Shown piece by piece: positions 7,289 through 30,972 of a stretch of 64,000 nucleotides of DNA. This DNA is from Lytechinus pictus. Lineage: Eukaryota. Below the pieces are notes generated by a model. It saw only the letters and a program-made list of their open reading frames with translations, made no database searches and was not told the origin of the DNA. The number at the start of each line of letters is the position of its first letter. The stretch's first letter is position 1. Made by a program: the position numbers and the translations under genes. The stretch spans positions 23,808,001 to 23,872,000 of the forward strand of contig NC_087250.1 of assembly GCF_037042905.1 (NCBI RefSeq), in the 5' to 3' direction.

Positions 7289-10200
7289 TCAATCATTACT
7301 AGAACTGCTACTCTTCCGGTCTTTAATCATTTGTCGGTTGTTGAATGGTAATTGTGCTGGACCACCCTGAAAAACTTCCACACAATCGTCTCGTCGCATC
7401 CGCTTCAGGGCATCCTCAAGATCCTGAGGGCTACAGATCTTCTTCCGTTGCTCTGCAAGATTAATCAGATTCCCTGTAGGGTCTGTTAGATCTTCCAGAC
7501 TATCAATGACTTCCTCCATTCCTAAGGCAACGGCAAGACCTCTCCAATCGTCCAATGTTATGCGACGACCGTTCAACCGTTGACTGAGCTCCTGCCGGGT
7601 GATCACGGAGGGTTCCTGTGGCACGCCATGGCTGCCCGATGTAATGTTCACAGATTCAATATTGTAAACATTTCCATAAACTGACATACAGGAAATTTGC
7701 TGGCTGAGCTGCCTCACTTCTGAACCCACCGGTGTTGTAGGTTGTGAGCCTGGTTCAGTACTCATAAGGATTCTGGGGGATTCATCCATCGGCTGGGTGG
7801 AGTTGGTACCTGGGGTATAGAAATAAAATGGCTTTGAGTTACTTCTCATTTTGGGGTGAAGCAACATTTCTCATATAGCAATTGCTCCTACACTAAATTG
7901 TCTGAAGATTGAACTAATGTTATGTTGTTGTTGGATCTAATGCTCTTTTATTTTCAACCTGTCTTAAATGAAGACAACGCAATGCAGGATGTACAGTTTA
8001 TATATACATTATTTATTGAAGATGATTATAACTTGATGATGACAAATACATGAGTAAGTCTGATGGTGACTATACTCTGAAGTATACAAAATAGACTCTG
8101 CAAACTGATGTAATATAAATTGTAAACTCTTCTGTAGCTGTCTAAACCATTCTCAAGTCTATTCTCTATTCTGATTTGGGTTCAGAAGCGAACCCCTTTT
8201 ATATTTGTCTGGTCAAGACTCTCTACAGCCAAAAAGGTGTTGGTCAACCATAAACGCTTGACCAAAACAATCTGTACATCATAACTTTACTCTGAATTGG
8301 GGTAGTTGACCTTTTCGGGAGAACATGAAATGTAGTGAATAAGAAAACCATAAAATGTGTGTGCATCAGAAGTTTAGCTGGAAGAAGAATGAGTAATACT
8401 TTCTTAAGTAAGTTGGAATTGGTATACTTCCTGTAGAAGTATTGATTAAGTATTGATATATTATTGAATATGTGAGATATGCACAGGGGGCATGTGCCCC
8501 CCATTTTGAGAAGCAAAATAAAAAATTTGTAATGTAAAAATGCCATTAAATGAGAGGTGTGCCCCCTCTTTAGAAATTGAATACCTTTTTTTTTGCTTGT
8601 CAAAAATTTTCTCCTAAAAATTTGCCCCCCTTTTGGAAAATCCTGGATCCGCCCCTGTGCACAATGACAAGAGTTTGAAAGAAAAGACTAACCAACATCA
8701 GATGATGATTCTCCTTTCTTCCCCGCTTGACCCCTAATGGCTTTCCTCAAGCGCTCTTCGAGGTTACTATCATCGATATGTGCATTATTTAGAACCCGCA
8801 AGTGACGCGGAAGGTGTGTTTCGTCGCAGCATCGGATTACTATCACCCGGCCCTTCCAATTACCCCCATCCACCCTTGGATGTAAAGCCATGTGTGTCGT
8901 CATAGTCTGGTAAAGATCATCCGTATCACAATCCTCCTTTGTGATGATGAGGACTACGTGAGAGCAGGCCTCCAGAGCATCCTCGATGCTTATCATCTTT
9001 GGAACTCCAAGTACGGCATCCGCAGCGGTCACCAAAGTCCAGTTGTTTCTACTGATGATGTCTTTGACCTTACAAACGTGATTCGTCTCTTGGCTGAATT
9101 CAAGATAGATGTTACGTTCTGGCTCTCCTTGATCTGTCAAAGATCTATTTGTTCCAGAGTCCATGGAACCTTCAAAGAAAAGATGGAAAATAAAGAAATT
9201 CGTAAATATCAGTTATCTGATACTGAAAACAAGGTATAACCTGAAACTTCCAATCATGTTTTCTCTGTGTTTTACAATTTTCTTCTTAAAAATTCATTCT
9301 GATTAAATCAGGTAGTTGACTGGGTTTCAGTAGATCAATGTTGACAAGCTACATATTATTTCAAAGCTGAGACTCGGCTCCTTCAAACAATATCAAAATG
9401 TTAATTTCATGATAACTCTTTTTTTTCATTTCATTATTATCATTGTATTGTTTATTTGACCAATATAAAAAAGTACAAATACATACACCAGAAAAAAAAG
9501 AGTATACAAACATGCAAAGAAATATGGGAGCGGGAAGTGAGTCAGGGGTAGGCCAAGTCAGGGGGCACAAAAGTGAAATTTAACACTGTTGCCCGGAGGC
9601 ATGTGCCCAACACATGCCAGCCCGTATACATCAATAAATAAATTTACACAAAATATTGCACAATGAAAAATGGGAATGCAAAGAAAGGGGGGGGGGGGGC
9701 AAACAAAAAAATCAAAGAAGATAGAGATGTATTGGGAATACATGCGCATTTTTATCATTAGAGCCATTTCAGCAGGAGTAAATGAGAGAAGGCCATACTC
9801 ACCGAGGCTAGAAAATGATGAATCTCCAGAACCATCCACAGAGGTTGTAGCTTCCTGACTATTTGATACAGCCAGGTCTCGCTGTTGTTGACTTTCTCTG
9901 CATCTCTGATACTCTCTTATTTCTTCCTGTTGCTGTTTTTCAGCTTTAATTTAAGGCATGAATGAAAGAAGAATAACCAAGGGGACATTTTGACCTGTAA
10001 GTACGAGCCAACCTACAGACTGTACATTCTTCTACTACTAGAATCTTTATAAGAAAAGGGTCTGTGGCATGAATCAAAGACATGGGGTGGGGCTGAATTA
10101 ATGCACAAAATCAGACTTTGATGGTAATTTTAACAATTTCTGTACAATGTTCACTGAAACAGAGGATGCGCTGTAGCCCCCAAGGCACCCCCAGGGGCCG

Positions 10201-13200
10201 TGGAAGCGGGGGGCGGGCTTCAGCTCCCCACTTTTTTCCAATACTGTGTACAAAAGCATAAAAATAACCATATGATTGTGATTTTTTGCATGGTCAGCCC
10301 CCCCCCCCCCACTTTGAAAACCGTTCCGTGGCCCCTGCCCCCTTGAATTACATATGAGATTTAGAAAGTGGATGACTTACTTTTTATACAGGCCTGTGCC
10401 TTATTATACCAATAATAAAACAACAGTTTTGAAATGGAATCTAAAAAAAATTTCCCTTTCTCTCCCCCCCTCCCCATTTTGGATGCATACCTGGGCCCCG
10501 TCTTACAAAGAGTTAAGATTGATCCAATCAATGTGACTCTATGGAAATCCATCAGTGTCATGATTTTTTATACAGGAAATGTGCAAAATGTCCTTTGTAA
10601 ACTAAGGAGAACACACCAAATTATCAAGAAATCAATGAATTTAAATATACATATCTAGATTTTTTTTTTAACAGACATGGATTCTATATGTTGACTTTGA
10701 GCATTGGCTTTCCATAGTTGCGATTGATCAGATCAATCGCAACTCTTTGTAAGATGGGCTCCAGCACTTTTGTTTTTTTGTATATATTCTAATTTTGTGG
10801 AAATAAATGAAATGAAATTAATCTACTGGCACAGACCCTTAGTATTAATATCTAATGTAAAGTATGGAGATTAGATTCACTCTTGTACTGAACGGAAATT
10901 ATTCCTTTCTTTATCAAATCCTCCCTAAAGTTTCCGGGTGGGTGTTCCATAAAGCTCTTTGTAAAGTTACGCACAACTTAACGCACGATTGGAACATGTT
11001 CTTAGGTCATAAATCAATTACATATGGATAACACATAGCACAAGAAAGGATCACCAGTCGTGCATAAAGTCATTCATATCTTACGAACAGCTTCATGAAA
11101 CACCCATATTTAAGTGAGGGCCCTGGATTTATCAAGATATTCCCACTTGACTATAAATTAAAGTAATAAAAAAAATCACCTTTGGATTATTAGAAAAAAA
11201 AACAAGCAAACAGATTAAAAAAAAAAAATTGAATCATAATTCTGATGGCGAAATATGACTGGTTGCCAGATAAGACCCCCCCCCCATGTGGCTGCTCGCA
11301 ATACAAACAGAAGGTTTGATGGAGGTGACACGACATTAGCTCTTGCAACATTTGCTCTGGTCTTGATATCTCAGAGGTTAGGCTACTGGGTTAGAGTTAG
11401 GATTGTAATAGAGTTTTTTGTTCAGAATCATGTAAATATATTGATTAGGGTTTGGAGGTTGTTTTTTGGCTGCAGATTTTCCATCAGAGCAATTGTCGCC
11501 GGAGCAAATGTCAACTCATGGAACCCTGATGAAGTCTAGTCTCAAGACCCAAGACATGGTATACCTGTAAATCGTTAAATTTGAGTTTGCAATTGCAAAC
11601 TAACCTCTGACTAGTATTGTGTCTCTGATCATGAGAAGCTTGGCTCTTGTCATTGCATCACGCATCCTGCTCATCTGGTGTTCAGCTTGAACTGTTGCCC
11701 TCCAGGAAGTCAGCAAGTCAACCGTCCCTTTGGTTGTCACAGATCCAGTCAACCGATTGGTGGTGTTGCATTTGTTGATTTGAGCTCTGGTACAACCCAA
11801 GGCATTGGCTAAACGCTCCATCTGGTCATCGGTTTCCAGATTGTCGGCTATCTCTCGTAGGACGGTGCCCGATATCATCCCAGTGATAGGTCTGGAAGGA
11901 GTCAAGAAAAGAAAATGACCAAATAATATCAGCTTAACTTGCTTTAAAGGTAAGTCCACCCCAACAAAATGTTCATTTTATAAAGAAAATTTTATAAAAA
12001 GCATGAAGGTTTCATCAATGTCAGATGTTAAAGTTAAAAAATTCTTTAAAATAAGTTTTGCTTATTTTTCACAAAAAAATTTAGCCTATATGACATACTG
12101 GTCAGTATGCAAATGAGGGGACCAATGACATCACCCACTCACTATTTCTCTTGTAGTTTATGTGTAATATGAAATAATTTGATTTTCTCCTCATTGTCAT
12201 GTGATGCAAAGTTTTTCGCGCTCTGAATGGAAACATCAATAACACTTTGTGGATCAAACAAGAGGTTCTTCATTGTCAAATCTGTAAAAATGGAATTCAA
12301 ACAATAACAGACAAAAGAAAGGGTGAGTGACATCAGTGACTCTCTCATTTGCATGTCACTGAATTGTGCATATAGGCCTGACTGTTTTGTGACAAAAGCC
12401 ATAACTTTCTTATTTTACATCCTGATTTTGATAAAAATTTTCAGCATTAAATTTGTTTGATTTTTCTCTCTTAATTCAAATCTGGGTGGAATTGAATGCT
12501 AATTGTAGAGCTATATCTTTTTCCCCTCTGGTATAACTACACTATAGCCATGAGACCTGACCTATTCCTAGTGAAAGGGACATGGAATGGCCAAAAAAAA
12601 AATGAATGGGAAAAGTGTAGAGGACTAAGTTGTGGCATTCTGCTAAACAAAAATTGAATGACTTTGCATCAATCCTAATCTTTACCCAATGAGGGTCTAC
12701 TTTTTCTTTCTCAATGAACCCCAGTCAAATTGTAATCAACTTACTCTGGAATGTCACCAGGAGACTGTTTTAAAGATGACTGACTTGACTGTGCTGCTGG
12801 AATAAAGAAAGACAAAATTGTCATACATGCATGCATGAAACCAAAGTAATAATTATGATTATAATCCACTACATTTGTAAGGTACATGTTAAATACAAAT
12901 GTTTCTACGTGCAAAGTTGAATTAGAACACTTCCATAGCCAAATTATTTAATACACTAAATAATCATCTTTATTAACATTAATATGAAAATATTGATAAC
13001 ATAATATTGTGGACAATAAATACCTTAGTTATTCCTCATATTTGTACAGCAAATTTGGCATTATGCCCACAAAATCATTGATTTAGTGGGCGAAATCTCC
13101 TTATTTTGGGGGGTGAAAACCTCTTCTTATTGGGGGGCATGTAAAATGTTTCCTCGGGAAAATGTGCCCCGTTCGGAAAATCCTGGATCCGCCCCTGCAA

Positions 13201-15785
13201 TCAGTAGAGGCGCACGGCCAATATGGGAGACTCTCTCCAATAGGGGAGACAATCTCCCACATTGGAGACTAGCTTTGCAAAAGGACAAAAGAAACACCAA
13301 CAAAAACATGATTTTTTCCACCCAAAATGTTGTCTCACTTAGGTCAGAAGCCCATTTGTTTTGTGTGTGATTGACAACAAAAATCCTTATCAAAACAGAA
13401 GTAGACGGTGAATTTTTAAAGGGCCCAGCCACTGACAAATCATGGGGAAATTGAATCGATACGAAATTTGCAAAAGGCCAATTGACTTGCATAATATAAT
13501 CCGTCCGTCATGAGCGCCCGTCGGACTAATGCGATAAAAGTTTGGACAGCACGAATTTGACCGAACTCGTGATGGTTATTTACTTCGGATCGTCGCAGTT
13601 CCAGTTTCCAACAATCCCAATTTCTAGACTCATAACAGGTCTCTTGATTGCTAAACAAAAATAAATAACCTCTGTGAAGTTACATGTTTCAAAGTAAAAA
13701 CATGCAGTTTACTTCTGGTTGGTTAGTCTACTAAAACTAATGCTCTCCTAAAAACCTCCCAGACATGCCAGCGTCTATTACATAACACCCCCAGGCATGC
13801 AGCCGAGTCAAAGACTTGAATCCAGTCAGACCACAGGTCCCTATGCTAATGAGCAAATAGGCCAGATTCATCCAAAATTCCAAATCATCTCGTGGCTGAA
13901 TCCTCCTCCTGGCAAAATCTCGTGATTTGTGAGAAAGAATTTACCTGTTTTAACCTCTAGTTAAATGAAATATCATTGCACCATCAGATAGAGTAAATGT
14001 TATTCTTTCATATTGGTCATTTATTTTTTATACAACATTTTGATAAATAAGTAAATTTCTGGCCTGAAAATGTGCCTCAAAACTGAATTTTCTTCCTCTG
14101 TTTTCATTTGCAAATTGTGCAAATTTTTTATTTTGAGCCTTAATGATATATACATCACCATAAAGCTGAAGTTCTGTACTTTCTCACAATGCCATTCTTG
14201 ATATTCGGCACCTTTTAATCGGGTCAAGATCACACTTTTTCCACCAAGGTACAAGACGAGATTTCTGAAATTTTGTACTTGCATGAAATCCATGGGCCGA
14301 TTGCACGAAAGGGTCTTTCCAAGGACCGTCTTTCGTGTCGCCCATCTTTTATGATGCGCTATAAGCGGGGTGTTTCTGAAATTTATGATAAACAAATAAA
14401 ATTTGTAAGCTTGCTTTTAAATCAAATTTTATACGATTTCATGAGATATCACATCATTTTATAAACAAATATTTTGTTTATTTTAATGGACAAATAAAAT
14501 ATATTTCCAGATAATTTATTTGAAATGCGTTTCACATGGCGTATCATAAAAGATGGGCGACACGAAAGACGGTCCTTGGAAAGACCCTTTCGTGCAATCG
14601 GCCCCAGAGTTCTGATTGGCTGGATAAGGTTCACAGAACAACAGGCGCGGGTAATTTGAGGAGATTATACCACATGGGAAGTGTGACCTTCCCATGAACC
14701 CAGGCACTTGAACCGTTGGAATTTGCCATTGTGTGGTCTCTTTGACCAATCAGAGTGCAGTATTCTTGTTTTCAAGCTGCTTTATGTACTTGGACAATGA
14801 AAAAAGTGTGATCTTGACCCGATTAAACCAATTCTTATTTTCCCCATGATTTGTCAATGAAAGGTCGCTTTAAAGTAGACGGTGAATGACAAGGGGTAAC
14901 TTTTCATGAGGAATCTGCTTATCACATTTTTATTTGCCGCCAAGGTAATCCTTTTGCAGCAAATGTAAACAAACAAAATTGATCTCCAAACTGGAGACTG
15001 TCTCTGAAATTGGATACCCAAATTCTTTACAAAAGTCTCTGATAAAAATATGGAGATAATCTCCCACATTGGAGACAGTCTCCAATATTGGCCGTGCGCC
15101 TCTACTGGCAGTATGATTAAGTATGATTTGGACTCAATTTGGAGCCTTGATTCTGCCCGGCATCATTACATGGTCATGATCATTTCATTTCAAATTTCAG
15201 AAAGCATACACACGAAGGCAGTTTGAAAAAAAATAACTTTTCCATTTCAGAGCTGAAAAATATGAAAACTGACAGACTAAGCTGTCCATAGTCTACATAG
15301 AAATCTATTGGAGAGAGAAACACATATAAATTATCATACTAAAATTTAGTTCTAACGTTAGACCTCTTAATCTACTTTTGCCAAACGACCGCAATCATGA
15401 TGACATGCAGCGACAACTGTTTTCTCTTTTTTGATAATTCTTGTCTACCGGACCATGCTGAAAAAACAGTGAATCAATTATCAAGTTCAACATCAGGCCT
15501 TCACTTACCGGTATGCAATGAAGATGTATTGATTCTTAGTGAGGATAAAATTGCCTCAAGTGTGCTCCGCTTCGGCTCTGCCTCAGACAAATCCCTCCAT
15601 TCCCTCAAAATTTCAATAGTGCTTCTGAGGTAATCATTGTTCTTTTCAAGAAGTATTCTTTCCAAATTTCCAAGACTTTGTCCGAGTTTGAGTCCTAGAT
15701 CCTGATATAGATGATCAGAAACTTTCGAAGAACACACTTTCCTTGCTATCTCAAACAGTTCTTTATCAGTTATATGTGTATCCAT
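7289..15785 (-). CDS. Multi-death-domain TIR protein, DD-DD-TIR-(RHIM-like)-DD, 584 aa; exons 15785-15509, 12796-12745, 11891-11605, 9943-9803, 9169-8693, 7809-7289
   Basis: All introns are GT-AG with polypyrimidine tracts, and phases (1,2,1,1,1) give one open frame of 1755 nt from a good start context (AAACATGG). Exon 1 is DD-like (ITDKELFEIARKV...LYQDLGL...EILREWRD...LEAILSSL). Exon 3 is DD-like (GTVLREIADNL...LANALGC...DLLTSWR). Exon 5 is TIR (IYLEFS...DAVLG...IEDALEACSHVVLIIT...VIVI...LPRHLRVL). Exon 6 is a MyD88-type DD (ELSQRLN...DDWRGLAVALG...DPTGNLI...RRDDCV). Confidence 0.8.
10493..10763. mobile_element. Roughly 270-bp MITE family with GGGCCCCGTCTTACAAAGAGTT termini; further copies near 21665-21880, 31495-31770, 47262-47515, 49695-49950, 50940-51200 and 54540-54770
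   Basis: Near-identical internal sequence (CTCTATGGAAATCCATCAG...AAAGGAGAACACACCAAATT) and inverted ends (AACTCTTTGTAAGATGGG) recur about 7 times. Confidence 0.8.
10939..11105. mobile_element. Small MITE family (GGGTGTTTCATAAAGCTGTT...AACAGCTTTATGAAACACCC); copies near 31195-31365 and 50300-50465
   Basis: Inverted termini and a shared core (AAGGATCACCAGTCG) in three places. Confidence 0.7.
13202..15107. mobile_element. 1.9-kb non-autonomous TIR element in intron 1 of the minus DD-TIR gene, with a nested palindromic MITE (14294-14604); fragment at about 44695-44788
   Basis: TIRs CAGTAGAGGCGCACGGCCAATAT / ATATTGGCCGTGCGCCTCTACTG. The nested element has TIRs of about 55 bp starting GGGCCGATTGCACGAAAGGGTCTTTCCAAGGACCG. 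Confidence 0.8.
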
Positions 15786-15889
15786 GTTTGCTAACGCCGG
15801 TCTCTACGATCGACTCCAATTCCTCCCACTGCTATGCTCATCTAATGCTGAATAAACTGAGCTCAAATACTACACTAGTATAGTACAGG

Positions 15890-16281
15890 CACCGAGCAGC
15901 TAGCCCGGCCCCCAAGCGCGCCCCGCCCGTTCCCCGCCCCCGGCCCAGCTCGCACTCCATCTCCGGCCAGCTAGCTAGCGTCGCGTCGCGTCGAGCTGAG
16001 AGTTTTGAGCAGATCGATCCATCCAGTATCCAGCGCGCGAAAGATTTCTGGGGATTCCCCCGATTCCTAGTGTTATGTACGCATGCGCAGACTATACCAA
16101 AGCCGAGCTAGCGAGGCGCCTAGCCTGCCTGCCTGCCATTTCTACAGCTCGTAGTTGAACTCCCGCTTTTTAGTACTATACTAAGCCTCGGCCTACTAAA
16201 TTATTTGAAAACCACGTCAGAATCCGACTGAAGCAAGCCACGACTGAAGCCTGAAGGAAGGCAGACTCAATATTTCAGAGA
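15890..16281. promoter_or_regulatory. Putative bidirectional GC-rich promoter of the DD-TIR pair: GC boxes, NF-kB site (16050-16060), NRF1-like site (16079-16089) and probable non-coding exon 1 of the plus gene ending at 16281
   Basis: CpG-rich island in an AT-rich background, with CCCCGCCC twice, GGGGATTCCCC and ACGCATGCGCA. A plus-strand donor GA|GTGAGT is at 16282. The minus gene's ATG is at 15785. Confidence 0.6.
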
Positions 16282-16384
16282 GTGAGTAAAACTAAAAGAG
16301 TATAGGGCCTAGACTATAGGCTATAGCAGGCCTACTGCCAGACACAATAATGCCACTGCCAGCCAGGCCCAGGGCCAGGTAACT

Positions 16385-16508
16385 TAGCCTGGAGGCGTCT
16401 GGGGAGTAAAAATCATAGTACTATCGTACGCTTACTCAGTGGGGAGTAAGCGTACGAATACGATATTACTATGATTTTTACTCCCCAGATGCCTCCAGCT
16501 CCAGGCTA
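16385..16508. mobile_element. 124-bp palindromic (hairpin) element TAGCCTGG...CCAGGCTA
   Basis: CTGGAGGCGTCTGGGGAGTAAAAATCATAGTA is nearly perfectly complementary to TACTATGATTTTTACTCCCCAGATGCCTCCAG. Confidence 0.7.
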
Positions 16509-16939
16509 GGGCCAGGCGCAGGCCCAGTTCAAATTTCAATGCAGCTAGTTTCTTCTTTCCTATGCCTGGTCGACTCCCGGGGGGGGGGGGGGGGGGGGGG
16601 CACTTACATTGACGAGTGGATTACCATGGCCATGCGCGACCAAAAAAACACATAAAAAGGATGTCTTTTTCAAGATAGGGCACGTTACATACGTAACGTA
16701 ATTAAGGGTGTCAGGGTAATTAAGGGTGTATGACAATACACCACTCCAGACGGTGGTGGCCTGTACTTAGTTATTGAGAAGAAGAAGAAGAAGTCAAAAA
16801 CGCTATAATAATTAAAAAAGGGTATCTATTTCGCTAGGAAAGCTACGTGTCTAGCCTCTAGGCACCCAAGGGTTCATTACAATTTACATGCTGCCGCGCA
16901 CAGAAAAATCAAGCCATAGAAGTCCTGTGTTGTGGACAC

Positions 16940-18863
16940 CCCAGGACCAAAATCCAGTTAAAACCAATTAGGGCAAAACCAATTGAAACCAGTTGGCCAA
17001 CTGGTTTCAATAGGGAAATTGGAACAACTGGTTCCAATTGAAAACCAGTTGCCAATTGGTTCCAGTTAAAACCAATTGGTTCCAATTGAAAACCAGTTGC
17101 CAATTGGTTCCAGTTAAAACCAATTGGGCAACTGGAACCAGTTGGCAATTGGTTCCAGTTGTTCCAATTTCCCTATTAAAACCAATTGAATCCAATTGGA
17201 GGCAACTGGTTTCAATTGGTTCCAGTTGAAACCAATTGGAGGCAACTGGTTTCAACTGGAACCAGTTGAAACCAATTGGTTTCCAACTGGATCCAATTGG
17301 AACTAATTGGAATGAACTTAATTAGTTACAAATTAATTAGCATTTGCACTAACTATTGCTCATATGCCAACACAGAAGCAGTATTATATGTCTATTAATA
17401 CCAATGTAAAGGGCATTGATAAAATACAGACTTTCATATGTATATATTATATGGAAGATCTTCAAATATATGTATTTTTATTTGATGTAATTTGGTAACA
17501 GTTAGTGGTGTACTAATTATCCTTTAATCTGTTTTAATTATAATCTATAACATTTATGAACATGGTTTTCACTGTTAAGTATTCTAAATACTTATCTTTA
17601 AAAAATGTGGCACTTGAAATTGAAAAGAATTAAATAGATACATTGTTAATGATGATAAATCTCATAAAACATTAATATGTGCACACTGGCAGATAATATG
17701 CAAATTAACTGGTTTCAATTGGATCCAGTTGGCTAACTGGAAAATTTCCAATTGGAAACCAATTGGAAATCATTTCCAGTTACCCAACTGGTTCCAGTTA
17801 GGATTTCCAGTTGCCCAACTGGTTCCAGTTGGGATTTCCAGTTACCCAACTGGTTCCAGTTAGAAATCATTTCCAGTTGGAAGTCATTTCCAGTTACCCA
17901 ACTGGTTCCAGTTAGGATTTCCAGTTGCCCAACTGGTTCCAGTTGGGATTTCCAGTTAGAAATCATTTCCAGTTGGAAGTCATTTCCAGTTACCCAACTG
18001 GTTCCAGTTAGAAATCATTTCCAGTTGGAAGTCATTTCCAGTTACCCAACTGGTTCCAGTTAGGATTTCCAGTTACCCAACTGGTTCCAGTTGGGATTTC
18101 CAGTTACCCAACTGGTTCCAGTTAGAAATCATTTCCAGTTGGAAGTCATTTCCAGTTACCCAACTGGTTCCAGTTAGGATTTCCAGTTGCCCAACTGGTT
18201 CCAGTTGGGATTTCCAGTTAATCAACTGGTTCCAGTTAGAAATCATTTCCAGTTGGAAGTCATTTCCAGTTACCCAACTGGTTCCAGTTAGGATTTCCAG
18301 TTACCCAACTGGTTCCAGTTAGGATTTCCAGTTGCCCAACTGGTTCCAGTTGGAATTTCCAGTTACCCAACTGGGTCCAATTAGAATTCATTTCCAGTTA
18401 CCCATCTTTCCAGTTAGAAGTCATCTCCAGTTACCCAATTGGTACCAGTTAGGATTTCCAGTTACACATCTGCATGGTTCAAGTTAGGATTTCCAGTTAC
18501 CCAACTGGTTCCAGTTAGAAATCATTTCCAATTGGAAGTCATTTCCAGTTACCCAACTGGTTCCAGTTAGGATTTCCAGTTGCCCAACTGGTTCCAGTTA
18601 GGATTTCCAGTTGCCCAACTGGTTCCAGTTGGGATTTCCAGTTACTCAACTGGTTCCAGTTAGAAATCATTTCCAATTGGAAGTCATTTCCAGTTACCCA
18701 ACTGGTTCCAGTTAGGATTTCCAGTTGCCCAACTGGTTTCAATTGGTTTCAACTGGAAATTGTTAAATTCCAGTTAAAACCAATTGAAACCAGTTAAAAC
18801 CAATTGAAACCAATTGAAACCAGTTGGAAATCCAACTGGTTTCAATTGGATTTTGGTCCTGGG
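16940..18863. mobile_element. Non-autonomous EnSpm/CMC-like element filled with CCAACTGG/CCAGTT satellite-like subterminal repeats
   Basis: TIRs CCCAGGACCAAAATCCA / TGGATTTTGGTCCTGGG with a 2-bp AC duplication on both sides. Repeat arrays at about 16955-17310 and 17706-18850 flank an AT-rich spacer. Confidence 0.75.
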
Positions 18864-21353: not shown

Positions 21354-24300
21354 ATGACCTCTGAGGCACGGTCCCAGGTCCTCCGGAACGACCGGCTCAT
21401 GTACCAACTGGCAGAGACCATAGATGCCGTCAAGTACTACTTCCCCTTAGGTCGTGACCTTCTTGGCTCCCAGGCGGCCGTCTCCAACATCATCGGACGA
21501 ACAGAACCAGATTACCAGGAGATTGTCTTCAAATGTTTGTATACATGGAGGAATGCGAATGGGAAAGGAAAGGGAGAGAGACTGGTGGAGATATTCAAAG
21601 GTGTTGAGTTAGATAAAGTTGCAGCTTACTTAGAGCATGGTAAGAAAGGTTTATTCATTATGAGTCCAGTGGCTTGTCTTACAAAGAGTTACGATCGATC
21701 CGATCAACCTCGACTGTATGGAAATCCATTGACGTCACCAGTTTTTTCTTAGAAAAATTTGCGCAATGCCCTTTGTAAGCAAAGAGAAGCATTCTGAATT
21801 TTCAAGAAATCATTGAATGTATGAAATTACACCATATCTAATAAAACATTTCAAGCAAATGTGGATCGTAGGTGTTGATGTTGCTGGCTTTCCATAGTTA
21901 TGGTTGATTGGATCAATTGCAACTTTTTGTAAGATGGAACCCAAGGTTGTATTTTATATATCTCTTTGACAGGTGACCCTTTCTTGGGAGTTAATTCGGT
22001 TCCCTGACAATGAAAAATCTGTATGTTAAGCCAAGCATAAAACCCAACCTCCAAAACTTAACCGTAATCATCTTTACATTGTTCTGAACCAAAAACTCTA
22101 TTACAATCCCACCTCTAACCCTATGCCCTCTGAGATTTTAAGTCAGGAGCAAATGTCGCAGGAGCATGCATCATATCACCATTAAATCAGCCCTATTGAT
22201 AATTTGGGGGGGGGGGGTGAAGACAACTTCCAAGCATATGAAAATGACCCCTTGCACTGAGCTGAATTGTAATATTGTCAATAATTTTCAATCCTAGTAT
22301 AGAGCATATCATGTGATCTAACATGCACTCCCAAAGGGAATTGCCTATCAATATTATCCCAGCTATGGCTCAGAAAGCTTTGTGCAGTGCACAATCATTT
22401 CAAGGAATAAATTCCCGCCAGGTTCCTGTTTCCCTTGCCTGGGGGGGTGTTTCACAGAGATTTAAGTATGACTTGGAGGCGTGCTTAAATTCTGATACGT
22501 ACGTGATATGAAACGTGCAATCCTCTTTGCATGATCTTACCAATGAGGACTTACATTTTTTAGTACATGCAACTAGGCATTTATTAAAAGTGCGACTCCG
22601 TCATACTTAAATCTTTGTGAAACACCCCCCTGGGTTGAGTGCAGCACAGTGTGGATAAATTTTTTGCTGAAGACAATGACGTGGCTGGGATTTAAATTCT
22701 CATTGAATATCCAGGCCATTTGAATCACATTTTGTAATTTTAAAAATTGATCAAAATTAATTTGTGGAACACATTCAATCATGAAACCAATTGAATATAT
22801 TAGAATGAAAAACAATGAAATTATTTATGAGAAATTTACAAGAGAATGAATAATAGAAATTCAAGTTTGACATTTGTTTGTAAACTATGTTGCTGAAAAT
22901 GCTATCTGCCGAGTTTTGCAAAAGATTTGACATCAAAACACCAAGTTCAGGGAGATAATGACAAATTTGGAAATTATACATTCATCCCATCTTGTTTGCG
23001 AAAATCCATACATGTATACCAACACCCCTAATTTCACATGGATCTGTCATTTCGCAGTGCAATTTGACCTCCTCCCCAAAAAGCCAGTCAAAATATTGTT
23101 AATCTATTTTTTAAGTGATTTCCTTATTTTATCCTTCCATTATTTCCACTGAGTTTTGCAAAAGCTTTGCCATCAAAATACCAATTTCAGGGGAATGATA
23201 ACAAAATCAGAAACACATTCATGAGATTCATCCCATTTTGCACGATTTAATTGATCACAATGTTGTCTTATTCCTCAGTCCATTTCCCCTACTGCAGCCA
23301 TATGGCGAGTTGTACCAGCTACATATAGGTGGTTTGAATGAAAATGAATGAAACTGCCGTTTTCAATTCGGGAAATGTGACTGAGGCATCATCCTCTCTC
23401 ATTTTATCCTCCAGCACTTGCAAGAAACCCAAACTGCCTTGGTGAGGATAGATTCCTACAGAGTTTGGCATCAAAGATAGACTGTGCGTCAGTCTACAGG
23501 AAACTGGGCCTTCCTCTCTTGGACAACAACTCTGCAAGATTGTCAAACCTCATCGGTCCTCTGAATATTCAATTTACCCAGTACAAAGAAGCACTCTTTC
23601 AAGTAAGATTACACTGTCGTCATTGCTGTTGATATCATTATTGTGTGAATTGCCAATTTGTCTACTGCCAGCTCGTCCACTCACCAAACAGTCTACTTTC
23701 ATTTAGTCTTATAATGCTCTTCAATCCATCAACATTTCGTCTAACATCCATTTGGTCCAATCATCACTTCGTCTAATCACAATTTCGTCTATGACCATTT
23801 CGTCTCATAACCAGTTGGTCTAATATGCATTTCATTTTCATTCATTTGACAAAACTGACACTGTGCAATTAGACCAAATGGTATATGGACTAAATGGTAT
23901 TTGACCAACTGGTTAATAGACGAAATGGCAATTAGATCATGTGGATAGTGGATGAACTGATGGTAGTAGACCAGTTGGCAATTGGACGAATTGGAATGAA
24001 CTGTTGTCGTGTCTAAAAGCTTGTGTCCTGTGCATTATTTGCTATAAAGTTCTTACCTAGCTGCCAATGAAATGGAAACTCTTAAAAGAATGGTTTCAGG
24101 GGAAGCATAAATTTCAAAACATAAAGCCAATCTTTAATGCTTTTAAGGAATATGTGAGAAAACAAAAATTGATTATCATGATAAAAACAAATGAAAACTT
24201 CTTCAGAAAACCATATTAGATTTATGTGTGTGCATGTTAACTGATTATTATGTTAAACTGTATTTCAGTAATTTCTCAGGCTCTCCCAGTCAATGTAATC

Positions 24301-27300
24301 ATACCCAACAACCAGTAAGATTTCATGAGATAAAGTAAGATTTTTTAGTTGAAATCACAAGGAATTTACAATTTTTATACTATGTGCAGGATAATTCTAG
24401 TATACAAATAGCGAATAGGCATGAGTGCGATGGTGCGAGATTTCGCATGAGGTGAAAGAAAGATGCTCTATTCAATGAGGTGTTAGCCGAGTTGAATAGA
24501 GTGTTTCTTTCTTTCACCGAATGCGAAATCTTGCACCATTGCACGAATAAGAATATTCACTATTTGTGCTGTACAATGCCTCGGACTTTAGCGAAAACTT
24601 TTCCTGCAGTAATCTATGAAAAGGGAGCAAAATATTGAAAGCAAAAAGCAAATCCCACAAGCGCGCATGACCTTGGGCAGCATTGCACATGTAGCCAGCA
24701 AGCTATGCGCGTATTTCACCTTCATTTTTTACTGAAAGCAAAGAAATGAATCGTATTGTGACGTCACCTCCTAAATTTGTGCAACGGTACATTTTGGATG
24801 GTATGTCTTTTGTGCAACGGTACGAATGTTTGACATTCAGTCTCCCATTTGCTCGCGTACAACAAGCTAAGTAGGCGTTGTACAATATCCATAACGTAAG
24901 TAATAATAATTTCTGATTTTCATACTTCTCTGTAGGTACTGATTAGGTGGAGGAATCGAGAGGGGTCGTATCTAAAATCATTGGAATCACTAAAGAAGAC
25001 ACTCCTCAGACATGGTCTCAGTGATACTGCTCGACAGCTGCATCACATGGAATATGGACATGATTCTGGTAGGTTGTTTGGATCAACTAGATGAATTCAA
25101 CTACAACTAAGATTGATCTGTCTCCGGGCCTGTGCACAAGACCCCTCATATTTGGCCATCCCTGGGAAATATCATTGGCCGGGCCTATTTCATAAAACTT
25201 GTTATAATAGATTTTGCAATAATGATTATATGTGCATATATAAAGTTCAAGTCCACTTCAGAAAAATGTTGTTTTGAATCAATAGAGAAAAATCAGGCAT
25301 GCACAATGCTGAAAATTTCATCAAAATCGGATGTATAATAAGAAAGTTACAACATTTTAAAGTTTCACTTATTTTTCACAAAATTGCACAATTTAGTCAC
25401 ATGAATGCAAATGAGAGAATCGATGTCCTCACTATTTCTTTTGTTTTGTTATTGTTTGAATTATACAATATTAAAATTTTTACAGATTTGAGGTGGACTT
25501 GTCCTTTAATTTATCAGAAGTCTCTAAGTAAGTGCTCTACAATAATGTAGCATAATTTCCCAGGCTTAAGCAGAGCAGCTACTACCGTAAGGGCACTAGT
25601 ATTCAACCCGTTTGGAGAGTTTCCTCAAATATATAGAAATATAGAATTTACCTGAATTTCAGACCTGTCTTATTTCCAAGAGCAAATGCTGGTTATTCTT
25701 TTTCCGTTATTTTTTTATTCAACCAGTTGACTGTGTGCGTGGGCGATCGAATTATACGGCGATGGATTTTGGTACTAGTATTCAACCTGTCGGCACTAGT
25801 ATTCAACCTAGCGATGAAAGATGGCCCTGTCTCTCAATCTGTCCTTGTCCCATCCGACTATGGACTAGACCATTTGAGATGAGACCAAACAGGGAATTAA
25901 TCAAAGCCAGAGACTTACATAGATCTAGATCTAATTTATCAATCTAAACCCTTTTGAGATTTGCTATCAATCCTCACTAGGTTGAATACTAGTGCCATTC
26001 AGTGCAAAAGGCCATCGCCGCATAATTCGATCCTCCGCGCATACAGTTGACAGATTGACAAAGAAAATACCAATAACAGATTACCCTGGAAATAACAAAG
26101 GTATGAAATTAAGATAAATTCCCTATTTCTAAATATTTTGGGGATATGTCAAAATCTTTTAATTATGCCGGGTTGAATACTAGTACCCATACGGTACCTA
26201 CCCAGGGGGAGTTGGGTACTCGAATTATAACATGATACCAATTTGCTGCGCCAACTAAAAATAGGGGGCTCTGGAACTAAATCTTGGTCTTAAGGACGTT
26301 CCACAGTTAAAGTGAAATCCATGTCATTTTCACCAAACTTTGCACATAGATACTTTAGAACCTTAATATTCGAAATATGCAAAAATTAACATAGGTCCAT
26401 GTGCTTGATTTTTTGCTATAGAGCTTCAAAGTTCACCCAAATTGATGTTCTGAAGAATTGCGCATTCAAACGAATTTGGCATTTTTAGACCTCGCAAGAA
26501 TACTACAATGAGTTTAAACCTCTATTACTCAGTCAAAATACATGAAAAAGTCTTCAAATTTCGCAAGAGAGTTAATAATTGTATCGTTAGTTTAGAGAAT
26601 CTAATTGTTGTGCTATTTGTTTGCAACTTTAAGTCTAACAGCACAGTCAGTTCTTAAAAATGGCGTAAAAGATAACAAAAACCCAATCTCAAAAACGTGA
26701 AATTTCAATAACAGACTACAAAAGTACAATAAATGCTGCACTTTATTCAAAATCCATGTCATTTTCACCAAAATTTGCAAAGTTGTAGAGGAAGCTATAC
26801 TTAAGAGGTACAAACATTAAAAAATAGGGGTTCATGTGCTTGTTTTCAAACTATCAGCATTTTTATTAGAGCAAACGTGCTTTTTAAAATACAAAAAATG
26901 CGCCAAATGCTTTGTATCTATGTGAAGAAAAATCGAAACCACTCTACCATTTATTCAAACTCGGGGTCATATTCGTGATTCTTGGCAGTACTGCAGAGTA
27001 AAGTATTTTGAAATTGTAGAGATATTTTTTAAAATGGTCCATGGAATAATTCAATTTTTTTAGCTTCATAAAATAACGCATCGGATCTGCAGTTAGGATG
27101 CAGATGATGAGAAAAATCAGCTCATACCCACAGCTAATTAATCACCTGTTCATCCATTGTGACGTCAGCGCGCGGAGTGTTAAATATGCGCAGATCATAA
27201 TGCGCACAAACATAACTGTGGAACGTCCTTAAAACGTGGGTCTCCAGAACTCATTAGATCGTAGGCGTAAAACGCGCGCGCGTCTTGCTAGATTCATATC

Positions 27301-30300
27301 GGGCCAGCGCAACCTAGCTGCAGGCGCGGGGGAACTTCAGCGGGCCGGCATAATGGCTTCGCGCCTATTGAGCTTGCCACTCTGACCAGCTGAGTCGATC
27401 ACGCGTCATGATGGGCACTCTCTGGAGCGAGAAATCACAAATTTAAGGGTCTCCGGAACAAGAAAAAATGGGAATTTCTATGGCTTTCTGAATTGGTGAT
27501 GCTCTGGAATGGAAATTTTGGACGAAAATGGGGGTCTCAACCGCGGCACATACGTATAATAAATTTATACTGAGGACCCCCCTCCCCCCACAACATACAC
27601 TAACTTGATATGGCAAAGCTTGTAAACTCAAGTACTAGATGAAGTCAGAGAGAGTCTATAAGCATGCATATTTCAAAGGAGTGTTTTACTGATTTGCTAC
27701 AACTAAGATTGATCTGTTAATTTGTTGTCCCATTGAAACAGATATTTACAATCATTTGTAAATAGTAAGCTTATCTCTTTAGGTAAATTAGTTAGGCCTC
27801 TGGTCCATGTAACCATCATTATGTTCCTCTATCATTGAAAATAGTATACCCCACCCAGTGGTGGACCGAGACACGGAGGAGACAATGATTGGAGGGGCAC
27901 TGTATTGTTTGTGAACAATCGCTGTGCCCCTCCGGGTCACGGTCCGCCACTGTCCTCACTGCTATAACACAGAAACCTAATGTATTTCAGTTGGGGTATC
28001 GCAACCCTGATTTTCGTTTTCCTTGTTTACAGAGTGGTCAGCACCTCGCAGATTCCCATGAGAGATTATGGTATTAGATTGCAGCTGTTCTTTTTGTTTT
28101 CTGACGTAGTAGTGTAAACAAACTCTTACTGGGGCTCCGCTTTTAAAGGAAAGGAAAAGTAGGAAATAGATATTTTACTTGTTTAAGGGTAATTTTATAT
28201 TCAAAAGTTACTCATGATTTAGAGGAAGACCTAACTGAAAGTTTGAATGAAGCGAAATGATCCAAAAGTGGCGATATAAACAATATTAACTAAAACTGGA
28301 CCGCTGACTTGCAATGTGCTCTCTAGCTCCCTCAATTGTGGTTATCTCTCTCTCTCTTTCCCGGTGAAGGTTGCTTCTCCAGGGGAGCATTTCATCAATA
28401 TTTTCATCCGACAAGTTGTCAGATCTGACATCTTTCCATGATTTTGATTGGCTGAGAGGCACTGTTCCTATGGTAACTGTCGGATAAAATGGGACTTGTC
28501 AGATAAAACATCCGACAAGTCCTTTCATGAAACGCCCCCCAGGAGTAGGATTGCATTGCACAGTGTGTGTTTACGTTAGGTTTAGGTGTCCAGTAGTGGT
28601 GGATGCCAAAAATGGGTTTCAGCATTAAAGGATAGGTTGTCGTCGTGCACAATGGTCAGCAACTTATCACTAATTTGTAAGAACAATTCTGATTGGTCCC
28701 TGGTCAGTCTTCTGAGCAAAATGCGCATGCAACAATGATCTTGATAGGCTATTTCAGTAGTGATTACCTCTGTGCTACTTCAACATGATCTGTATTTCTT
28801 CTTTTTATTTTGATGAACTTTAGGCCCCATGGAATTAACTGAAAATGACTGCAAAGAGGAAAGCACTCCTAGCTTTATAGATGAGAAGATGGAGACCGAC
28901 GGTCCTTCAGCGAACAGCGCCCTCTCTCAAGAACAATTCTATGACATTTATCTCTATGCATCGTCAAAGGACACGCAGTATTTTCTAGCCATGGAACAGC
29001 TCATACATAGAATAGGATGGAAGATGACTTCGTGTTTTGATCTTGAACTGGGTGAACCGGTGATGGGAAGCATAGAAAAGGCTCTACTGAAATGTTCTCA
29101 CGTCGTGTGTTTGATTACGAGAGATGATTGCAATCAGGTCAACGTCGAACGAACGATGACGATCGAGATGACCTTTCAGTCGCTCGAGGATAAAGGATTG
29201 TCCAGAAGTCTTATTCCGATATACTGTGGTGTGCCGAAATCTGCCCTACCGCTATCGCTAAGAGCGCTGAGAGGAGCCAGTATTGACGACCATGACCTTG
29301 AAAAGTTATTGAGGAATAGTATTGATGAGAGCATCCGTAAAAAGAGGGAAGAGGAATTTCGCAACATTTCAGGTGAGCTGGACAAAGGCTAGTAACATAC
29401 ATTACACGATAGGAATAGGACACAATTTTTTAAACACATTTTGCACTGAATAAAGGAGGTTCAAACGAGTATTCACTTGAAGTTAAGCATATTGCGGGGA
29501 ATACTAAAATCAGAATTCTGCTTTTCCACATGCCACAAACCTTTGTGGTCAGAGTAAAGTCAAAATTGGCTTCTTGTCATAGCCAGTGTTGACGTCTCTA
29601 CTATTTGGATTCAAATTTGCTTTTCTACAGGAAGGCTCAAAGTAGACTGGAATTTTTATTGTAGTATTTATACCACTATTTTGATTTTATAGGTTGGAAT
29701 TTTCATATTAAATGCAATCACAATCGGATCCAAATTGATTGTTTAGTGTGTGCAAGGCTTTACATTGTAAGGAAAAATTACACACATACATGTAAGGAAT
29801 TCAGACTCATTTTAATACAGTAATTAACTTCTCAGCTCTCCAGCATATGTACCAACTATGAGTGTCCTGATATTTTTAGATATTTTTCTTAGAAAATATT
29901 GATGCAAAACCTCTAAATCCCAGTCAATAGAATTATTTTCCAATCTTTTTATCTTGGAAATAGGCCAGGGTATTTTGGGAGATCATAAGGGGGGGGGGGG
30001 GGCTCCCAGGCCTGACTTGAGATTGGAGGTTGTCTGAGACATAATCTACAAAATTGTATTGTAATTTATTTCATGAAAATTGCTATTAATTATGCTAATT
30101 TATGTGTAATCAGTATGCAAAATCATACTTTGTCCTCTTACTCCCTATAAGATAAAGTTCAAAATGTTCTAATTTTGGGGGCAGGCACTCTTTGTGGTGT
30201 TCCTAGTAAGTATGAAAAAATTGTGATATCAGATCAATTTCTAATGTACTATATTGTTCTTTGCAATTTCTTATATATTTCCTTTTTTACCTTTTGTTTT

Positions 30301-30972
30301 TCATTGTTTTTTCGATGAAATTTGTTGGGGACTCGTATGAGATCATAAAAAGCATAAAATAAATCTATTTAGACCAGCAAAACTAAATAATCATACATTT
30401 ATGATTTTTGGTTGATTATATAATTTGCATTGACTTTGTACACATAATCATGTTTTTGAGCAATTTTTGGTCTGAGATGCAATGTTGCGTAATTTGGGAA
30501 CCGTGTACCCGGTCTCAAAAGATGCGCAAGAATTGAAAGTAAAAAGTCTGTGAGCAGCGCGGTAAAAAATGTTGTGCAAATCGTAGGACTAGATAGGGTC
30601 AAGTCTTGTTTCGGCCAGGAGATAGCATACATGCTTTGTTTCTACCTGGGGGATGGGAGGGACGAGGGGGGGGGGGGTGGCAAAGATGACTTTCCTAACA
30701 GCATTTTGATGACTTTAATTTCTTTGATGTCTGGTTTCCGATTCTTGTCACCATAAGGACAACGGGTGACCTTTGACTGTTACAAATTTTTGCATCTGCT
30801 TGCTAGTTTTGAGAACATTGTAAAAAATATATTTAAATGGCACTTTTTTTTTCTTAGAAATAACCCTTTATCTCTCTCTATCCACCCCCCCCCCAACACA
30901 GAACTGAGCACCCATACAGACGCCAATGATCCTCTACCATTGATCTCATCAAGCGAGGCAACATTCCAATGA
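21354..30972 (+). CDS. Tandem death-domain TIR protein, DD-DD-TIR-tail, 408 aa; coding exons 21354-21639, 23415-23602, 24936-25068, 28824-29372, 30902-30972
   Basis: Acceptor at 21328, with an in-frame TGA two codons before ATG 21354. GT-AG introns with phases 1,0,1,1 give a 1227-nt frame. DD1 is NDRLMYQLAETID...LGRDLLG...FKCLYTWRN. DD2 is split over two exons: EDRFLQSLASKID...LGLPLL...EALFQ|VLIRWRNREG...LKKTLLRHGLSDTARQL. TIR is FYDIYLYAS...FDLELG...IEKALLKCSHVVCLIT...LIPIY...LPLSLRAL. The last exon is the least certain. Confidence 0.8.
23648..24000. repeat. Interspersed repeat built of CCATTTGGTC/ATTTCGTCTA units with inverted halves; second copy at about 33515-33890
   Basis: AATTGCCAATT..GTCTA...ACCATTTCGTCTCATAACCAGTTGGTCT...ATTAGACCAAATGGTA is shared by both copies. 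Confidence 0.7.
25585..26194. mobile_element. Tc1/mariner-pogo-like MITE with TA target duplication
   Basis: TA|CCGTAAGGGCACTAGTATTCAACCC at the left and GGGTTGAATACTAGTACCCATACGG|TA at the right; internal copies of ACTAGTATTCAACC. Confidence 0.75.
26294..27228. mobile_element. TTAA-flanked (Kolobok-like) non-autonomous element
   Basis: TTAA|GGACGTTCCACAGTT at the left and AACTGTGGAACGTCC|TTAA at the right. Confidence 0.8.
28381..28540. mobile_element. Roughly 160-bp MITE; second copy at about 57897-58053
   Basis: TTTTCATCCGACAAGTTGTCAGAT...GATTGGCTGAGAGG...CCGACAAGTCCTTTCATGAAACGC is present at both sites. Confidence 0.7.

What the first reader, a model, noticed from the sequence alone, without database searches (positions are those of the whole stretch)
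16050..16089. Consensus NF-kB site centred in the shared promoter
GGGGATTCCCC (16050-16060) is a classic high-affinity Rel/p50 site. It lies 265 bp upstream of the minus gene's ATG and about 220 bp before the plus-strand donor at 16282, next to GC boxes and an NRF1-like ACGCATGCGCA. Inference: both genes could be NF-kB-inducible from one element, giving feedback on the pathway they act in.
Basis: partly seen in the sequence, partly recalled or inferred. Interest (0 to 1): 0.7.

Follow-up and report, generated by a model that had tools for sequence, protein, structure and literature searches.

The report
Conserved kB site between divergent TIR-adaptor genes
A perfect NF-kB-type binding motif sits between the start sites of two back-to-back sea-urchin immune-adaptor genes and is kept letter for letter in two other sea-urchin species, so it is probably a working control element, though nobody has yet shown that NF-kB binds it.

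Summary
GGGGATTCCCC is at 16050-16060 and occurs once in the window (0.01 expected). The genome is Lytechinus pictus.

Stranded RNA reads and transcript contigs show two genes transcribed away from each other. Their assembled 5' ends are only 92 bp apart (16012 and 16105), and the motif lies in that gap.
- **Minus gene:** LOC129263084, domain order Death-Death-TIR-Death.
- **Plus gene:** LOC129263083, Death-TIR, a paralog.

**Main new evidence.** The exact 12-mer GGGGAATCCCCA, in the same orientation relative to LOC129263084, lies upstream of the orthologs in L. variegatus and Strongylocentrotus purpuratus. In S. purpuratus the rest of the non-coding DNA cannot be aligned, and this is the only 12-mer the two promoter regions share. 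About 0.0004-0.0025 such sites are expected there by chance.

The genome also encodes a p50-type Rel-homology protein with the recognition loop RFRYGCEGPSHGG.

**Limits.**
- Binding and induction are untested.
- In L. variegatus, 3.4 kb of extra DNA carrying a transposon separates the motif from the partner gene's first exon. The tightly shared promoter is therefore not conserved, and the motif stays with LOC129263084.
- The GC boxes lie inside that gene's 5' UTR.

**Verdict.** This is a credible, conserved kB-type element and a new member of a known kind. The scan holds no earlier report of it on other DNA.

The parts
16050..16060 (.). kB-type 11-mer: GGGGATTCCCC on +, GGGGAATCCCC on the sense strand of the minus gene. 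With 16049 it forms the 12-mer GGGGAATCCCCA that is identical in three species.
16013..16104 (.). 92-bp gap between the assembled 5' ends of the two divergent transcripts. This is the core of the bidirectional promoter.
   Evidence: X15 contig pieces end at 16012 and 16105; strand-specific depth switches between the 15800-15999 and 16000-16199 bins
16078..16089 (-). NRF1/P3A2-like palindrome, TGCGCATGCGTA on the minus strand. Identical in L. variegatus; a one-transition variant TGCGCACGCGTA is at L010:8568 in S. purpuratus.
15509..16012 (-). Exon 1 of LOC129263084: 5' UTR 16012-15786 (contains the GC boxes at about 15915-15945) and coding part 15785-15509 (first Death-like domain).
7292..12796 (-). 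Remaining coding exons of LOC129263084 (583/584 aa): 12796-12745, 11891-11603 (Death), 9950-9801, 9170-8691 (TIR fold), 7810-7292 (C-terminal Death).
16105..16281 (+). Non-coding exon 1 of LOC129263083; the donor GT is at 16282-16283.
   Evidence: X15 contig record 6 on 16105-16284; plus-strand RNA depth
21354..30969 (+). Coding exons of LOC129263083 (408 aa, Death + TIR): 21354-21641, 23399-23623, 24936-25076, 28823-29371 (TIR), 30898-30969.

Best explanation
The 11-mer is a selectively maintained kB-type element in the proximal promoter of LOC129263084 (Death-Death-TIR-Death).

In L. pictus it lies about 40 bp upstream of the assembled 5' ends of both that gene and its head-to-head paralog LOC129263083 (Death-TIR). 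In this species it is therefore placed to act on both.

The most likely binding protein is the sea-urchin p105/p50-type NF-kB, alone or with the Rel-type protein. GGGGATTCCCC is the 11-bp near-palindrome with two 5-bp half-sites that p50-type dimers prefer (established knowledge of p50-DNA structures, not tested here). The L. pictus protein keeps the p50 recognition loop, including the histidine.

What is shown and what is inferred:
- Shown: presence, position between divergent transcripts, conservation, and a matching factor in the genome.
- Inferred: binding, and the direction of the effect. That could be activation after immune signalling, giving positive feedback on adaptor supply, or basal repression by p50-type homodimers.
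For: - **Position.** Stranded RNA from two runs is minus-strand only in 15400-15999 and plus-strand in 16000-16399. Transcript contigs end at 16012 and 16105 with no mismatches.
- **Rarity.** One copy in 64 kb against 0.01 expected. About 9e-5 expected in the gap from the genome-wide density. The promoter is single-copy.
- **Conservation in L. variegatus.** Exact motif at L009:9705-9715, 286 bp before the ATG, inside a perfect 21-nt run in a promoter that is 81% identical overall.
- **Conservation in S. purpuratus.** Exact motif at L010:9130-9140, in the same orientation, in the 2.6-kb interval between the same two head-to-head orthologs. Non-coding DNA there is otherwise unalignable. GGGGAATCCCCA is the only 12-mer shared in either orientation. 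The expected chance count of the specific 11-mer there is 4e-4 (Markov model) to 2.5e-3 (genome density).
- **Factor.** Rel-homology domains at three loci. The C18 gene reads RFRYGCEGPSHGGLPG.
- **Gene identity.** Death domains by Pfam. TIR fold by an AlphaFold model (pLDDT 71.7) whose best Foldseek match is the MyD88 TIR domain (E 4.9e-4) and best VIA-align Z is 12.3, to a Hydra TIR domain.
- **Same motif near a Rel gene.** The same exact 11-mer lies 5 kb upstream of the first Rel-homology exon on C7 (0.04 expected in the 40 kb scanned).
Against: - No binding, accessibility or induction data exist here.
- Contigs cannot give true start sites, and the reads tool reported no sharp starts (table 6).
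- The unbiased test is weak: some shared 12-mer appears in 13% of shuffles. The strength comes from asking for this particular motif.
- L. pictus and L. variegatus are close (about 80% in introns), so that comparison alone adds little.
- The tight sharing is not conserved in L. variegatus.
- An S. purpuratus paralog of the plus gene on another scaffold has no such site upstream.
- The 11-mer is 4.4 times commoner genome-wide than its reversed control, so promoter-like DNA may carry it more often than the average density suggests.
- Only three species could be compared. No orthologs were found beyond them.
Confidence: 0.55

Rival explanations
1. The motif is conserved and functional but is read by a different protein that recognises GGGGATTCCCC-like DNA. 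Candidates are a HIVEP/Schnurri-type zinc-finger protein or an Ikaros-like factor (GGGAAT core), not NF-kB/Rel.
For: That several vertebrate factors bind this same MHC class I-type site is established knowledge and was not tested here. 20 sampled genomic copies have unrelated flanks, and in the sample of 60 nearly all do. The 4.4-fold excess over the reversed control is compatible with a widely used general promoter motif.
Against: The full 11-bp near-palindrome with a G-run of four on each side is conserved, not just a GGGAAT core. A p50-type protein with an intact recognition loop is encoded. The flanking genes carry Death and TIR domains, and the same motif lies near a Rel gene, which fits an NF-kB circuit better.
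Confidence: 0.2
2. The element is a real kB site, but it serves only LOC129263084. LOC129263083 is driven by its own promoter elements (NRF1-like site and others), and the 92-bp spacing in L. pictus is an accident of deletion or insertion history.
For: In L. variegatus the partner's exon-1 homolog (L009:6154-6270) is 3.4 kb from the motif, with a high-copy transposon in between. In S. purpuratus a good opposite-strand donor at about L010:8385-8392, an NRF1-like site at 8568 and a separate kB-like GGGAGATCCCC at 8612 suggest a partner promoter about 500-600 bp from the exact site. The motif keeps a fixed orientation and a similar distance to the LOC129263084 ATG in both Lytechinus species.
Against: In L. 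pictus the site is as close to the plus start as to the minus start. kB elements act in either orientation and over kilobases (established knowledge). Both genes are expressed in the same RNA samples.
Confidence: 0.3
3. Chance: the motif has no function, and its presence in three species is coincidence plus recent common ancestry.
For: The finding was selected after the fact by a reader scanning many windows for known motifs. About 15 promoters per genome would carry the 11-mer within 600 bp by chance. L. variegatus is too close to be informative. Some shared 12-mer is seen in 13% of shuffles.
Against: The S. purpuratus test was specified before looking. It has a chance expectation of 0.0004-0.0025, with matching orientation and matching gene pair. 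No other non-coding similarity survives between the two genera.
Confidence: 0.1

Closest known systems
The MHC class I (H-2Kb) enhancer kB site, the palindromic high-affinity p50-homodimer site
   Same: The 11 letters GGGGATTCCCC are the same, with two 5-bp GGGGA-type half-sites around one central base pair (from established knowledge). A p50-type recognition loop with the histidine is present in the L. pictus protein.
   Different: This one is in an echinoderm, between two Death/TIR adaptor genes, about 40 bp from both assembled transcript ends. No binding data exist.
NF-kB feedback on its own pathway components: kB sites in IkB-alpha, NFKB1, NFKB2 and REL promoters in vertebrates; infection-induced Toll/Imd pathway genes in Drosophila
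   Same: A kB consensus lies in the promoter of putative upstream signalling adaptors. The same 11-mer also lies upstream of a Rel-homology gene in this genome.
   Different: The feedback is only inferred. The adaptors are uncharacterised, found here only in three echinoid species, and have not been shown to feed NF-kB.
Bidirectional promoters of head-to-head gene pairs
   Same: Divergent transcripts have 5' ends less than 100 bp apart, in a GC-rich region (60% GC, CpG observed/expected about 1.0) without a TATA box. The head-to-head gene order is conserved in three species.
   Different: The two genes are paralogs. The close spacing is not conserved: CDS-to-CDS distance is 5.6 kb in L. pictus, 10.3 kb in L. 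variegatus and 2.6 kb in S. purpuratus, with a transposon inserted in L. variegatus.
MyD88
   Same: The plus gene has the order Death then TIR. The TIR model's best Foldseek match is the MyD88 TIR domain, and the C-terminal Death domain's best PDB sequence match is the MyD88 Death domain.
   Different: The matches are weak: E 0.0027 for the Death domain, and TIR_2 stays below the Pfam cut-off. The minus gene has the order Death-Death-TIR-Death. Orthology to MyD88 was not established.

Membership tests
kB (NF-kB/Rel) response element | Sequence fits GGGRNWYYCC, ideally the 11-bp p50-type palindrome | tested here: met
   Exact GGGGATTCCCC at 16050-16060.
kB (NF-kB/Rel) response element | Lies in the promoter or enhancer of a transcribed gene | tested here: met
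   It sits in the 92-bp gap between divergent transcript ends, and both genes are expressed. Chromatin accessibility could not be tested.
kB (NF-kB/Rel) response element | The organism encodes a Rel-homology protein with intact DNA-contact residues | tested here: met
   PF00554 matches at three loci. The C18 gene has the loop RFRYGCEGPSHGGLPG.
kB (NF-kB/Rel) response element | Conserved at the orthologous locus in other species | tested here: met
   Exact motif in the same orientation at L009:9705-9715 and L010:9130-9140. It is the only shared 12-mer, with 4e-4 to 2.5e-3 expected by chance.
kB (NF-kB/Rel) response element | Bound by NF-kB/Rel in vitro or in vivo | not testable with these tools
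   Needs EMSA or ChIP.
kB (NF-kB/Rel) response element | Mutation changes stimulus-dependent transcription | not testable with these tools
   Needs a reporter assay.
Bidirectional promoter | Two divergent genes with start sites less than 1 kb apart | tested here: met
   Assembled 5' ends at 16012 (minus) and 16105 (plus), with a strand switch in the raw reads. Exact start sites are not resolved.
Bidirectional promoter | The close head-to-head spacing is conserved in relatives | tested here: not met
   Gene order is conserved. However, L. variegatus has 3.4 kb including a transposon between the motif block and the partner's exon 1.
Bidirectional promoter | Co-regulation of the two genes | tested here: inconclusive
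   Both are covered in the same two RNA runs. No conditions were compared.
MyD88-type adaptor | N-terminal Death domain followed by a C-terminal TIR domain | tested here: inconclusive
   The plus gene has Death-like exons followed by TIR, with TIR_2 at E 1e-4 to 5e-4, below the cut-off. The TIR fold is supported for the paralog family. The minus gene is Death-Death-TIR-Death, which is not the canonical order.
MyD88-type adaptor | Orthology to MyD88 | not tested
   There are only weak best matches to the MyD88 Death domain (E 0.0027) and the MyD88 TIR domain. No tree was built.

The most novel reading that the evidence does not exclude
The exact 11-mer, often paired with an NRF1/P3A2-like GCGCAYGCG site, is a recurrent composite promoter module in sea urchins. 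It wires an echinoid-specific pair of Death/TIR adaptors and a Rel-family gene into one NF-kB-driven positive-feedback circuit, which would explain why the motif is 4.4 times commoner than its reversed control.
Probability: 0.12. Interest if true: 0.6.

Novelty: new member of a known kind. Interest (0 to 1): 0.4.

Why it matters
Sea urchins have very large innate-immune gene repertoires, yet almost no immune cis-regulatory element has been mapped in them. Here a single, exactly conserved 11-bp site links a recognisable transcription-factor family to two uncharacterised, echinoid-restricted Death/TIR adaptor genes. That gives a small, testable entry point: one site to mutate in a two-colour reporter in larvae, and one probe for EMSA. 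If it works as predicted, it would show that NF-kB feedback on upstream adaptors, known from vertebrates and flies, also operates in echinoderms. It would also tie these orphan adaptors to that pathway.

Tried and rejected
- **L. variegatus RNA contigs (run X5) for footprinting.** They cover the exons (about 94% identity) but not 15800-16199, so they gave no footprint.
- **Protein search with the exon-1 ORF alone.** No hits within the length band.
- **Exact look-ups of P0001, P0002 and P0022.** Not on record. The longest isoforms P0027 and P0028 did work.
- **Diadema antillarum locus L011.** Only TIR-level similarity (30-39%), no divergent partner and no kB-like site. It is a distant paralog and uninformative.
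- **Two ENA contigs carrying related TIR exons.** No DNA was served.
- **S. purpuratus paralog LOC100891758 on another scaffold (L077).** No exact site upstream. There is one 1-mismatch site before a third Death-domain gene, which is not significant.
- **Local alignment of the L. pictus 5' UTR and partner exon 1 to S. purpuratus.** Scores were no better than shuffles.
- **Idea that these are the 'missing' echinoderm CIKS/ACT1 adaptors** (Death + SEFIR; PMC11087794 reports no CIKS found in echinoderms). Rejected for now: 10 of 13 family members hit Pfam TIR_2 and none hit SEFIR, and the top structural matches are TIR domains.
- **Idea that the genome-wide excess of the motif comes from a repeat family.** In 60 sampled sites only three pairs share flanks.
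- **kB plus NRF1-like co-occurrence.** 2 of 60 sampled sites against 0.23 expected. Suggestive only.
- **Literature.** No paper names any of the six LOC identifiers, and no paper was found on kB sites at sea-urchin adaptor promoters.
- **Bacterial promoter and terminator scan.** Irrelevant for a eukaryote.

Full report
**1. The observation**

The 11-mer GGGGATTCCCC is at 16050-16060. It is unique in the window, where shuffles give 0.01 copies. The loose kB decamer is not enriched in the window: 6 matches against 5.25 expected, and four of the six are this site read in two registers on two strands.

In the whole 812-Mb genome the 11-mer occurs 772 times on both strands, against 176 for the backwards-read control. 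That is about 1 per Mb, or 9e-5 per 92 bp and 6e-4 per 615 bp. The promoter DNA is single-copy.

In 60 sampled genomic copies nearly all flanks are unrelated; only three pairs share flanks. The excess over the control is therefore not caused by one repeat family.

**2. What surrounds it**

Protein searches identify the genome as Lytechinus pictus.

- **Minus gene: LOC129263084** (583/584 aa).
  - Exons are 15785-15509, 12796-12745, 11891-11603, 9950-9801, 9170-8691 and 7810-7292.
  - Pfam finds Death domains, with the strongest at residues 484-558.
  - The middle domain reaches TIR_2 only below the cut-off.
  - A 13-sequence alignment gave an AlphaFold model (pLDDT 71.7). Its best Foldseek match is the human MyD88 TIR domain (E 4.9e-4). 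Its best VIA-align matches are almost all TIR domains (Z 12.3 to a Hydra TIR).
  - 10 of 13 family members hit TIR_2 and none hit SEFIR.
- **Plus gene: LOC129263083** (408 aa).
  - Coding exons are 21354-21641, 23399-23623, 24936-25076, 28823-29371 and 30898-30969.
  - Its TIR exon is 37% identical to the minus gene's (E 1e-25).
  - The two genes are therefore head-to-head paralogs.

No relatives were found outside L. pictus, L. variegatus and S. purpuratus, apart from weak TIR-only matches.

**3. Is it a bidirectional promoter?**

The two ribo-depleted, stranded RNA runs separate cleanly by strand.

| Interval | Which first mates give depth | RNA strand |
|---|---|---|
| 15400-15999 | on the + strand only | minus |
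| 16000-16399 | almost only on the - strand | plus |

The minus-strand reading is checked by the known minus exon at 11600-11999, which shows the same pattern.

- A 1,666-nt transcript contig of run X15 matches 11605-11891 and 15509-16012 without a mismatch.
- A 1,313-nt contig matches 16105-16284.
- Minus-strand depth in 16000-16199 is essentially nil.

The assembled 5' ends are thus 92 bp apart, and the motif lies 38 bp from one and 45 bp from the other. Contigs do not give true start sites, and the tool saw no sharp starts, so these distances are approximate.

The gap and the 5' UTR are 51-60% GC with CpG observed/expected about 1.0-1.2, against 37.5% and 0.61 for the window.

**4. Phylogenetic footprint**

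The orthologous loci were fetched through the longest protein isoforms.

*L. variegatus*
- The exact motif is at L009:9705-9715, 286 bp before the ATG, in the same orientation.
- The promoter aligns at 81%. The motif sits in a perfect 21-nt run, and the NRF1-like site in a perfect 19-nt run.
- Introns are also about 80% identical, so this comparison is only weak evidence.

*S. purpuratus*
- The ortholog LOC100891602 (48% protein identity) again lies head-to-head with the ortholog of the plus gene. That gene's Death exon is at L010:7366-7082, 78% protein identity.
- The exact motif is at L010:9130-9140, in the same orientation.
- Nothing else in the non-coding DNA aligns.
- A word search between L. 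pictus 15786-16400 and the 2.6-kb S. purpuratus interval finds one shared 12-mer in either orientation, GGGGAATCCCCA.
- Any shared 12-mer occurs in 13% of shuffles, so the unbiased test is not significant. The specific, pre-stated 11-mer is expected only 4e-4 to 2.5e-3 times in that interval.

I take the S. purpuratus result as good evidence that the letters are under constraint.

**5. What is not conserved**

- **L. variegatus.** The homolog of the partner's exon 1, with its donor intact, is at L009:6154-6270, which is 3.4 kb from the motif block that starts at 9674. Part of the intervening DNA matches thousands of places in the L. pictus genome at 85-91% identity, so it is a transposable element.
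- **Spacing between the two coding starts.** It is 5.6 kb in L. pictus, 10.3 kb in L. variegatus and 2.6 kb in S. purpuratus.
- **S. purpuratus.** A strong opposite-strand donor near 8385-8392, an NRF1-like TGCGCACGCGTA at 8568 and a weaker kB-like GGGAGATCCCC at 8612 suggest a separate partner promoter about 500-600 bp from the exact site. This is inference only.

The motif therefore follows LOC129263084. The 92-bp shared core is a feature of L. pictus.

**6. Is there a factor to read it?**

Rel-homology domains are found at three loci. The C18 gene encodes RGFRFRYGCEGPSHGGLPG, which is the p50/p105-type recognition loop including the histidine. From established p50-DNA structures, that histidine extends the half-site to five base pairs. 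This is why an 11-bp GGGGA-T-TCCCC site suits p50-type dimers.

Upstream of the Rel-homology genes the following turned up:
- An exact copy of the 11-mer at C7:44057240, 5 kb upstream of the first Rel-homology exon of the C7 gene. In the 40 kb scanned, 0.04 copies are expected, and the search was made after the fact.
- A GGGGAAACCCC site and a GGGACTTTCC site 7-10 kb upstream of the C18 gene. These are not significant.

**7. Mechanism and odds**

- **Functional cis-element: about 85%.** It is most likely a proximal promoter element of LOC129263084.
- **Read by NF-kB/Rel: about 55%.**
- **Drives both genes in L. pictus: about 30%.**

Activation after immune signalling, giving positive feedback on adaptor supply, is the simplest reading. 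Repression by p50-type homodimers cannot be excluded. That the adaptors signal to NF-kB is itself only inferred from their domains.

**8. Comparison with what is known, and novelty**

The letters are those of the classic MHC class I kB site. The logic is that of NF-kB feedback on pathway genes in vertebrates and flies. The setting is a bidirectional promoter of a paralog pair.

No paper in the library names these genes or reports a kB site at a sea-urchin adaptor promoter. It is a new member of a known kind: a well-supported prediction, not a new mechanism.

Noticed in passing
G000:C7:44057240-44057250 (locus L015): The exact 11-mer GGGGATTCCCC lies 5 kb upstream of the first Rel-homology exon of the C7 Rel-family gene and about 1.2-1.7 kb from a CpG-rich window. 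This could be an autoregulatory site. In the 40 kb scanned, 0.04 copies are expected.
   Followed up: partly
G000:C1:13231223 (L026) and G000:C1:18718914 (L032): Two of 60 sampled genomic copies of the 11-mer have an NRF1-like GCGCAYGCG site 10-25 bp downstream on the same side as in the window, against about 0.23 expected. A kB + NRF1/P3A2 composite may recur in this genome.
   Followed up: partly
L009:6271-9673 (L. variegatus): 3.4 kb of extra DNA lies between the partner's exon-1 homolog and the kB/NRF1 block. Positions about 8122-9527 match thousands of L. pictus loci at 85-91% identity, so they are a transposable element.
   Followed up: yes
window 16389-16498 and 16578-16600: In intron 1 of the plus gene there is a 47-nt-arm inverted repeat (89% complementary) followed by a run of 23 G. 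S. purpuratus also has a 22-30-nt homopolymer run in its intergenic interval (L010:8806-8835).
   Followed up: no
window 16600-16990, 11000-11200, 12000-12400, 13400-14800: RNA depth of 100-400 on both strands, with reads mostly under 95% alike and many loose ends. These are transcribed high-copy repeats in the introns, not part of either gene.
   Followed up: no
window 17025-18830: Long tandem arrays (31-nt unit ATTTCCAGTTACCCAACTGGTTCCAGTTAGG, with higher-order periods of 114-279) fill much of intron 1 of the plus gene.
   Followed up: no
L077 (S. purpuratus AAGJ06000001.1:7795768-7830670): A second S. purpuratus copy of the plus-gene family (LOC100891758, 619 aa with extra Death repeats) sits on another scaffold. 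It has no LOC100891602-like neighbour and no exact kB site. The older model XP_011672607.1 looks like a chimera of the two loci.
   Followed up: partly
window 7292-15785 (-) and 21354-30969 (+): Both adaptor genes appear restricted to echinoids. Searches of 5.8 and 1.8 billion proteins found full-length relatives only in L. pictus, L. variegatus and S. purpuratus. The TIR domain is so diverged that Pfam misses it at its cut-off. PMC11087794 reports that no CIKS/ACT1 adaptor is known in echinoderms, but these proteins look like TIR, not SEFIR.
   Followed up: partly
window 36060-37361 (-): A single-exon 433-aa ORF of a multi-pass membrane protein. In L. variegatus the syntenic neighbour carries Pfam Mannosyl_trans2 (PIG-V type GPI mannosyltransferase).
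   Followed up: no
window 46-1440 (+) and 40811-42310 (+): Reverse-transcriptase-like ORFs of non-LTR retrotransposons, judged by eye from the translations.
   Followed up: no
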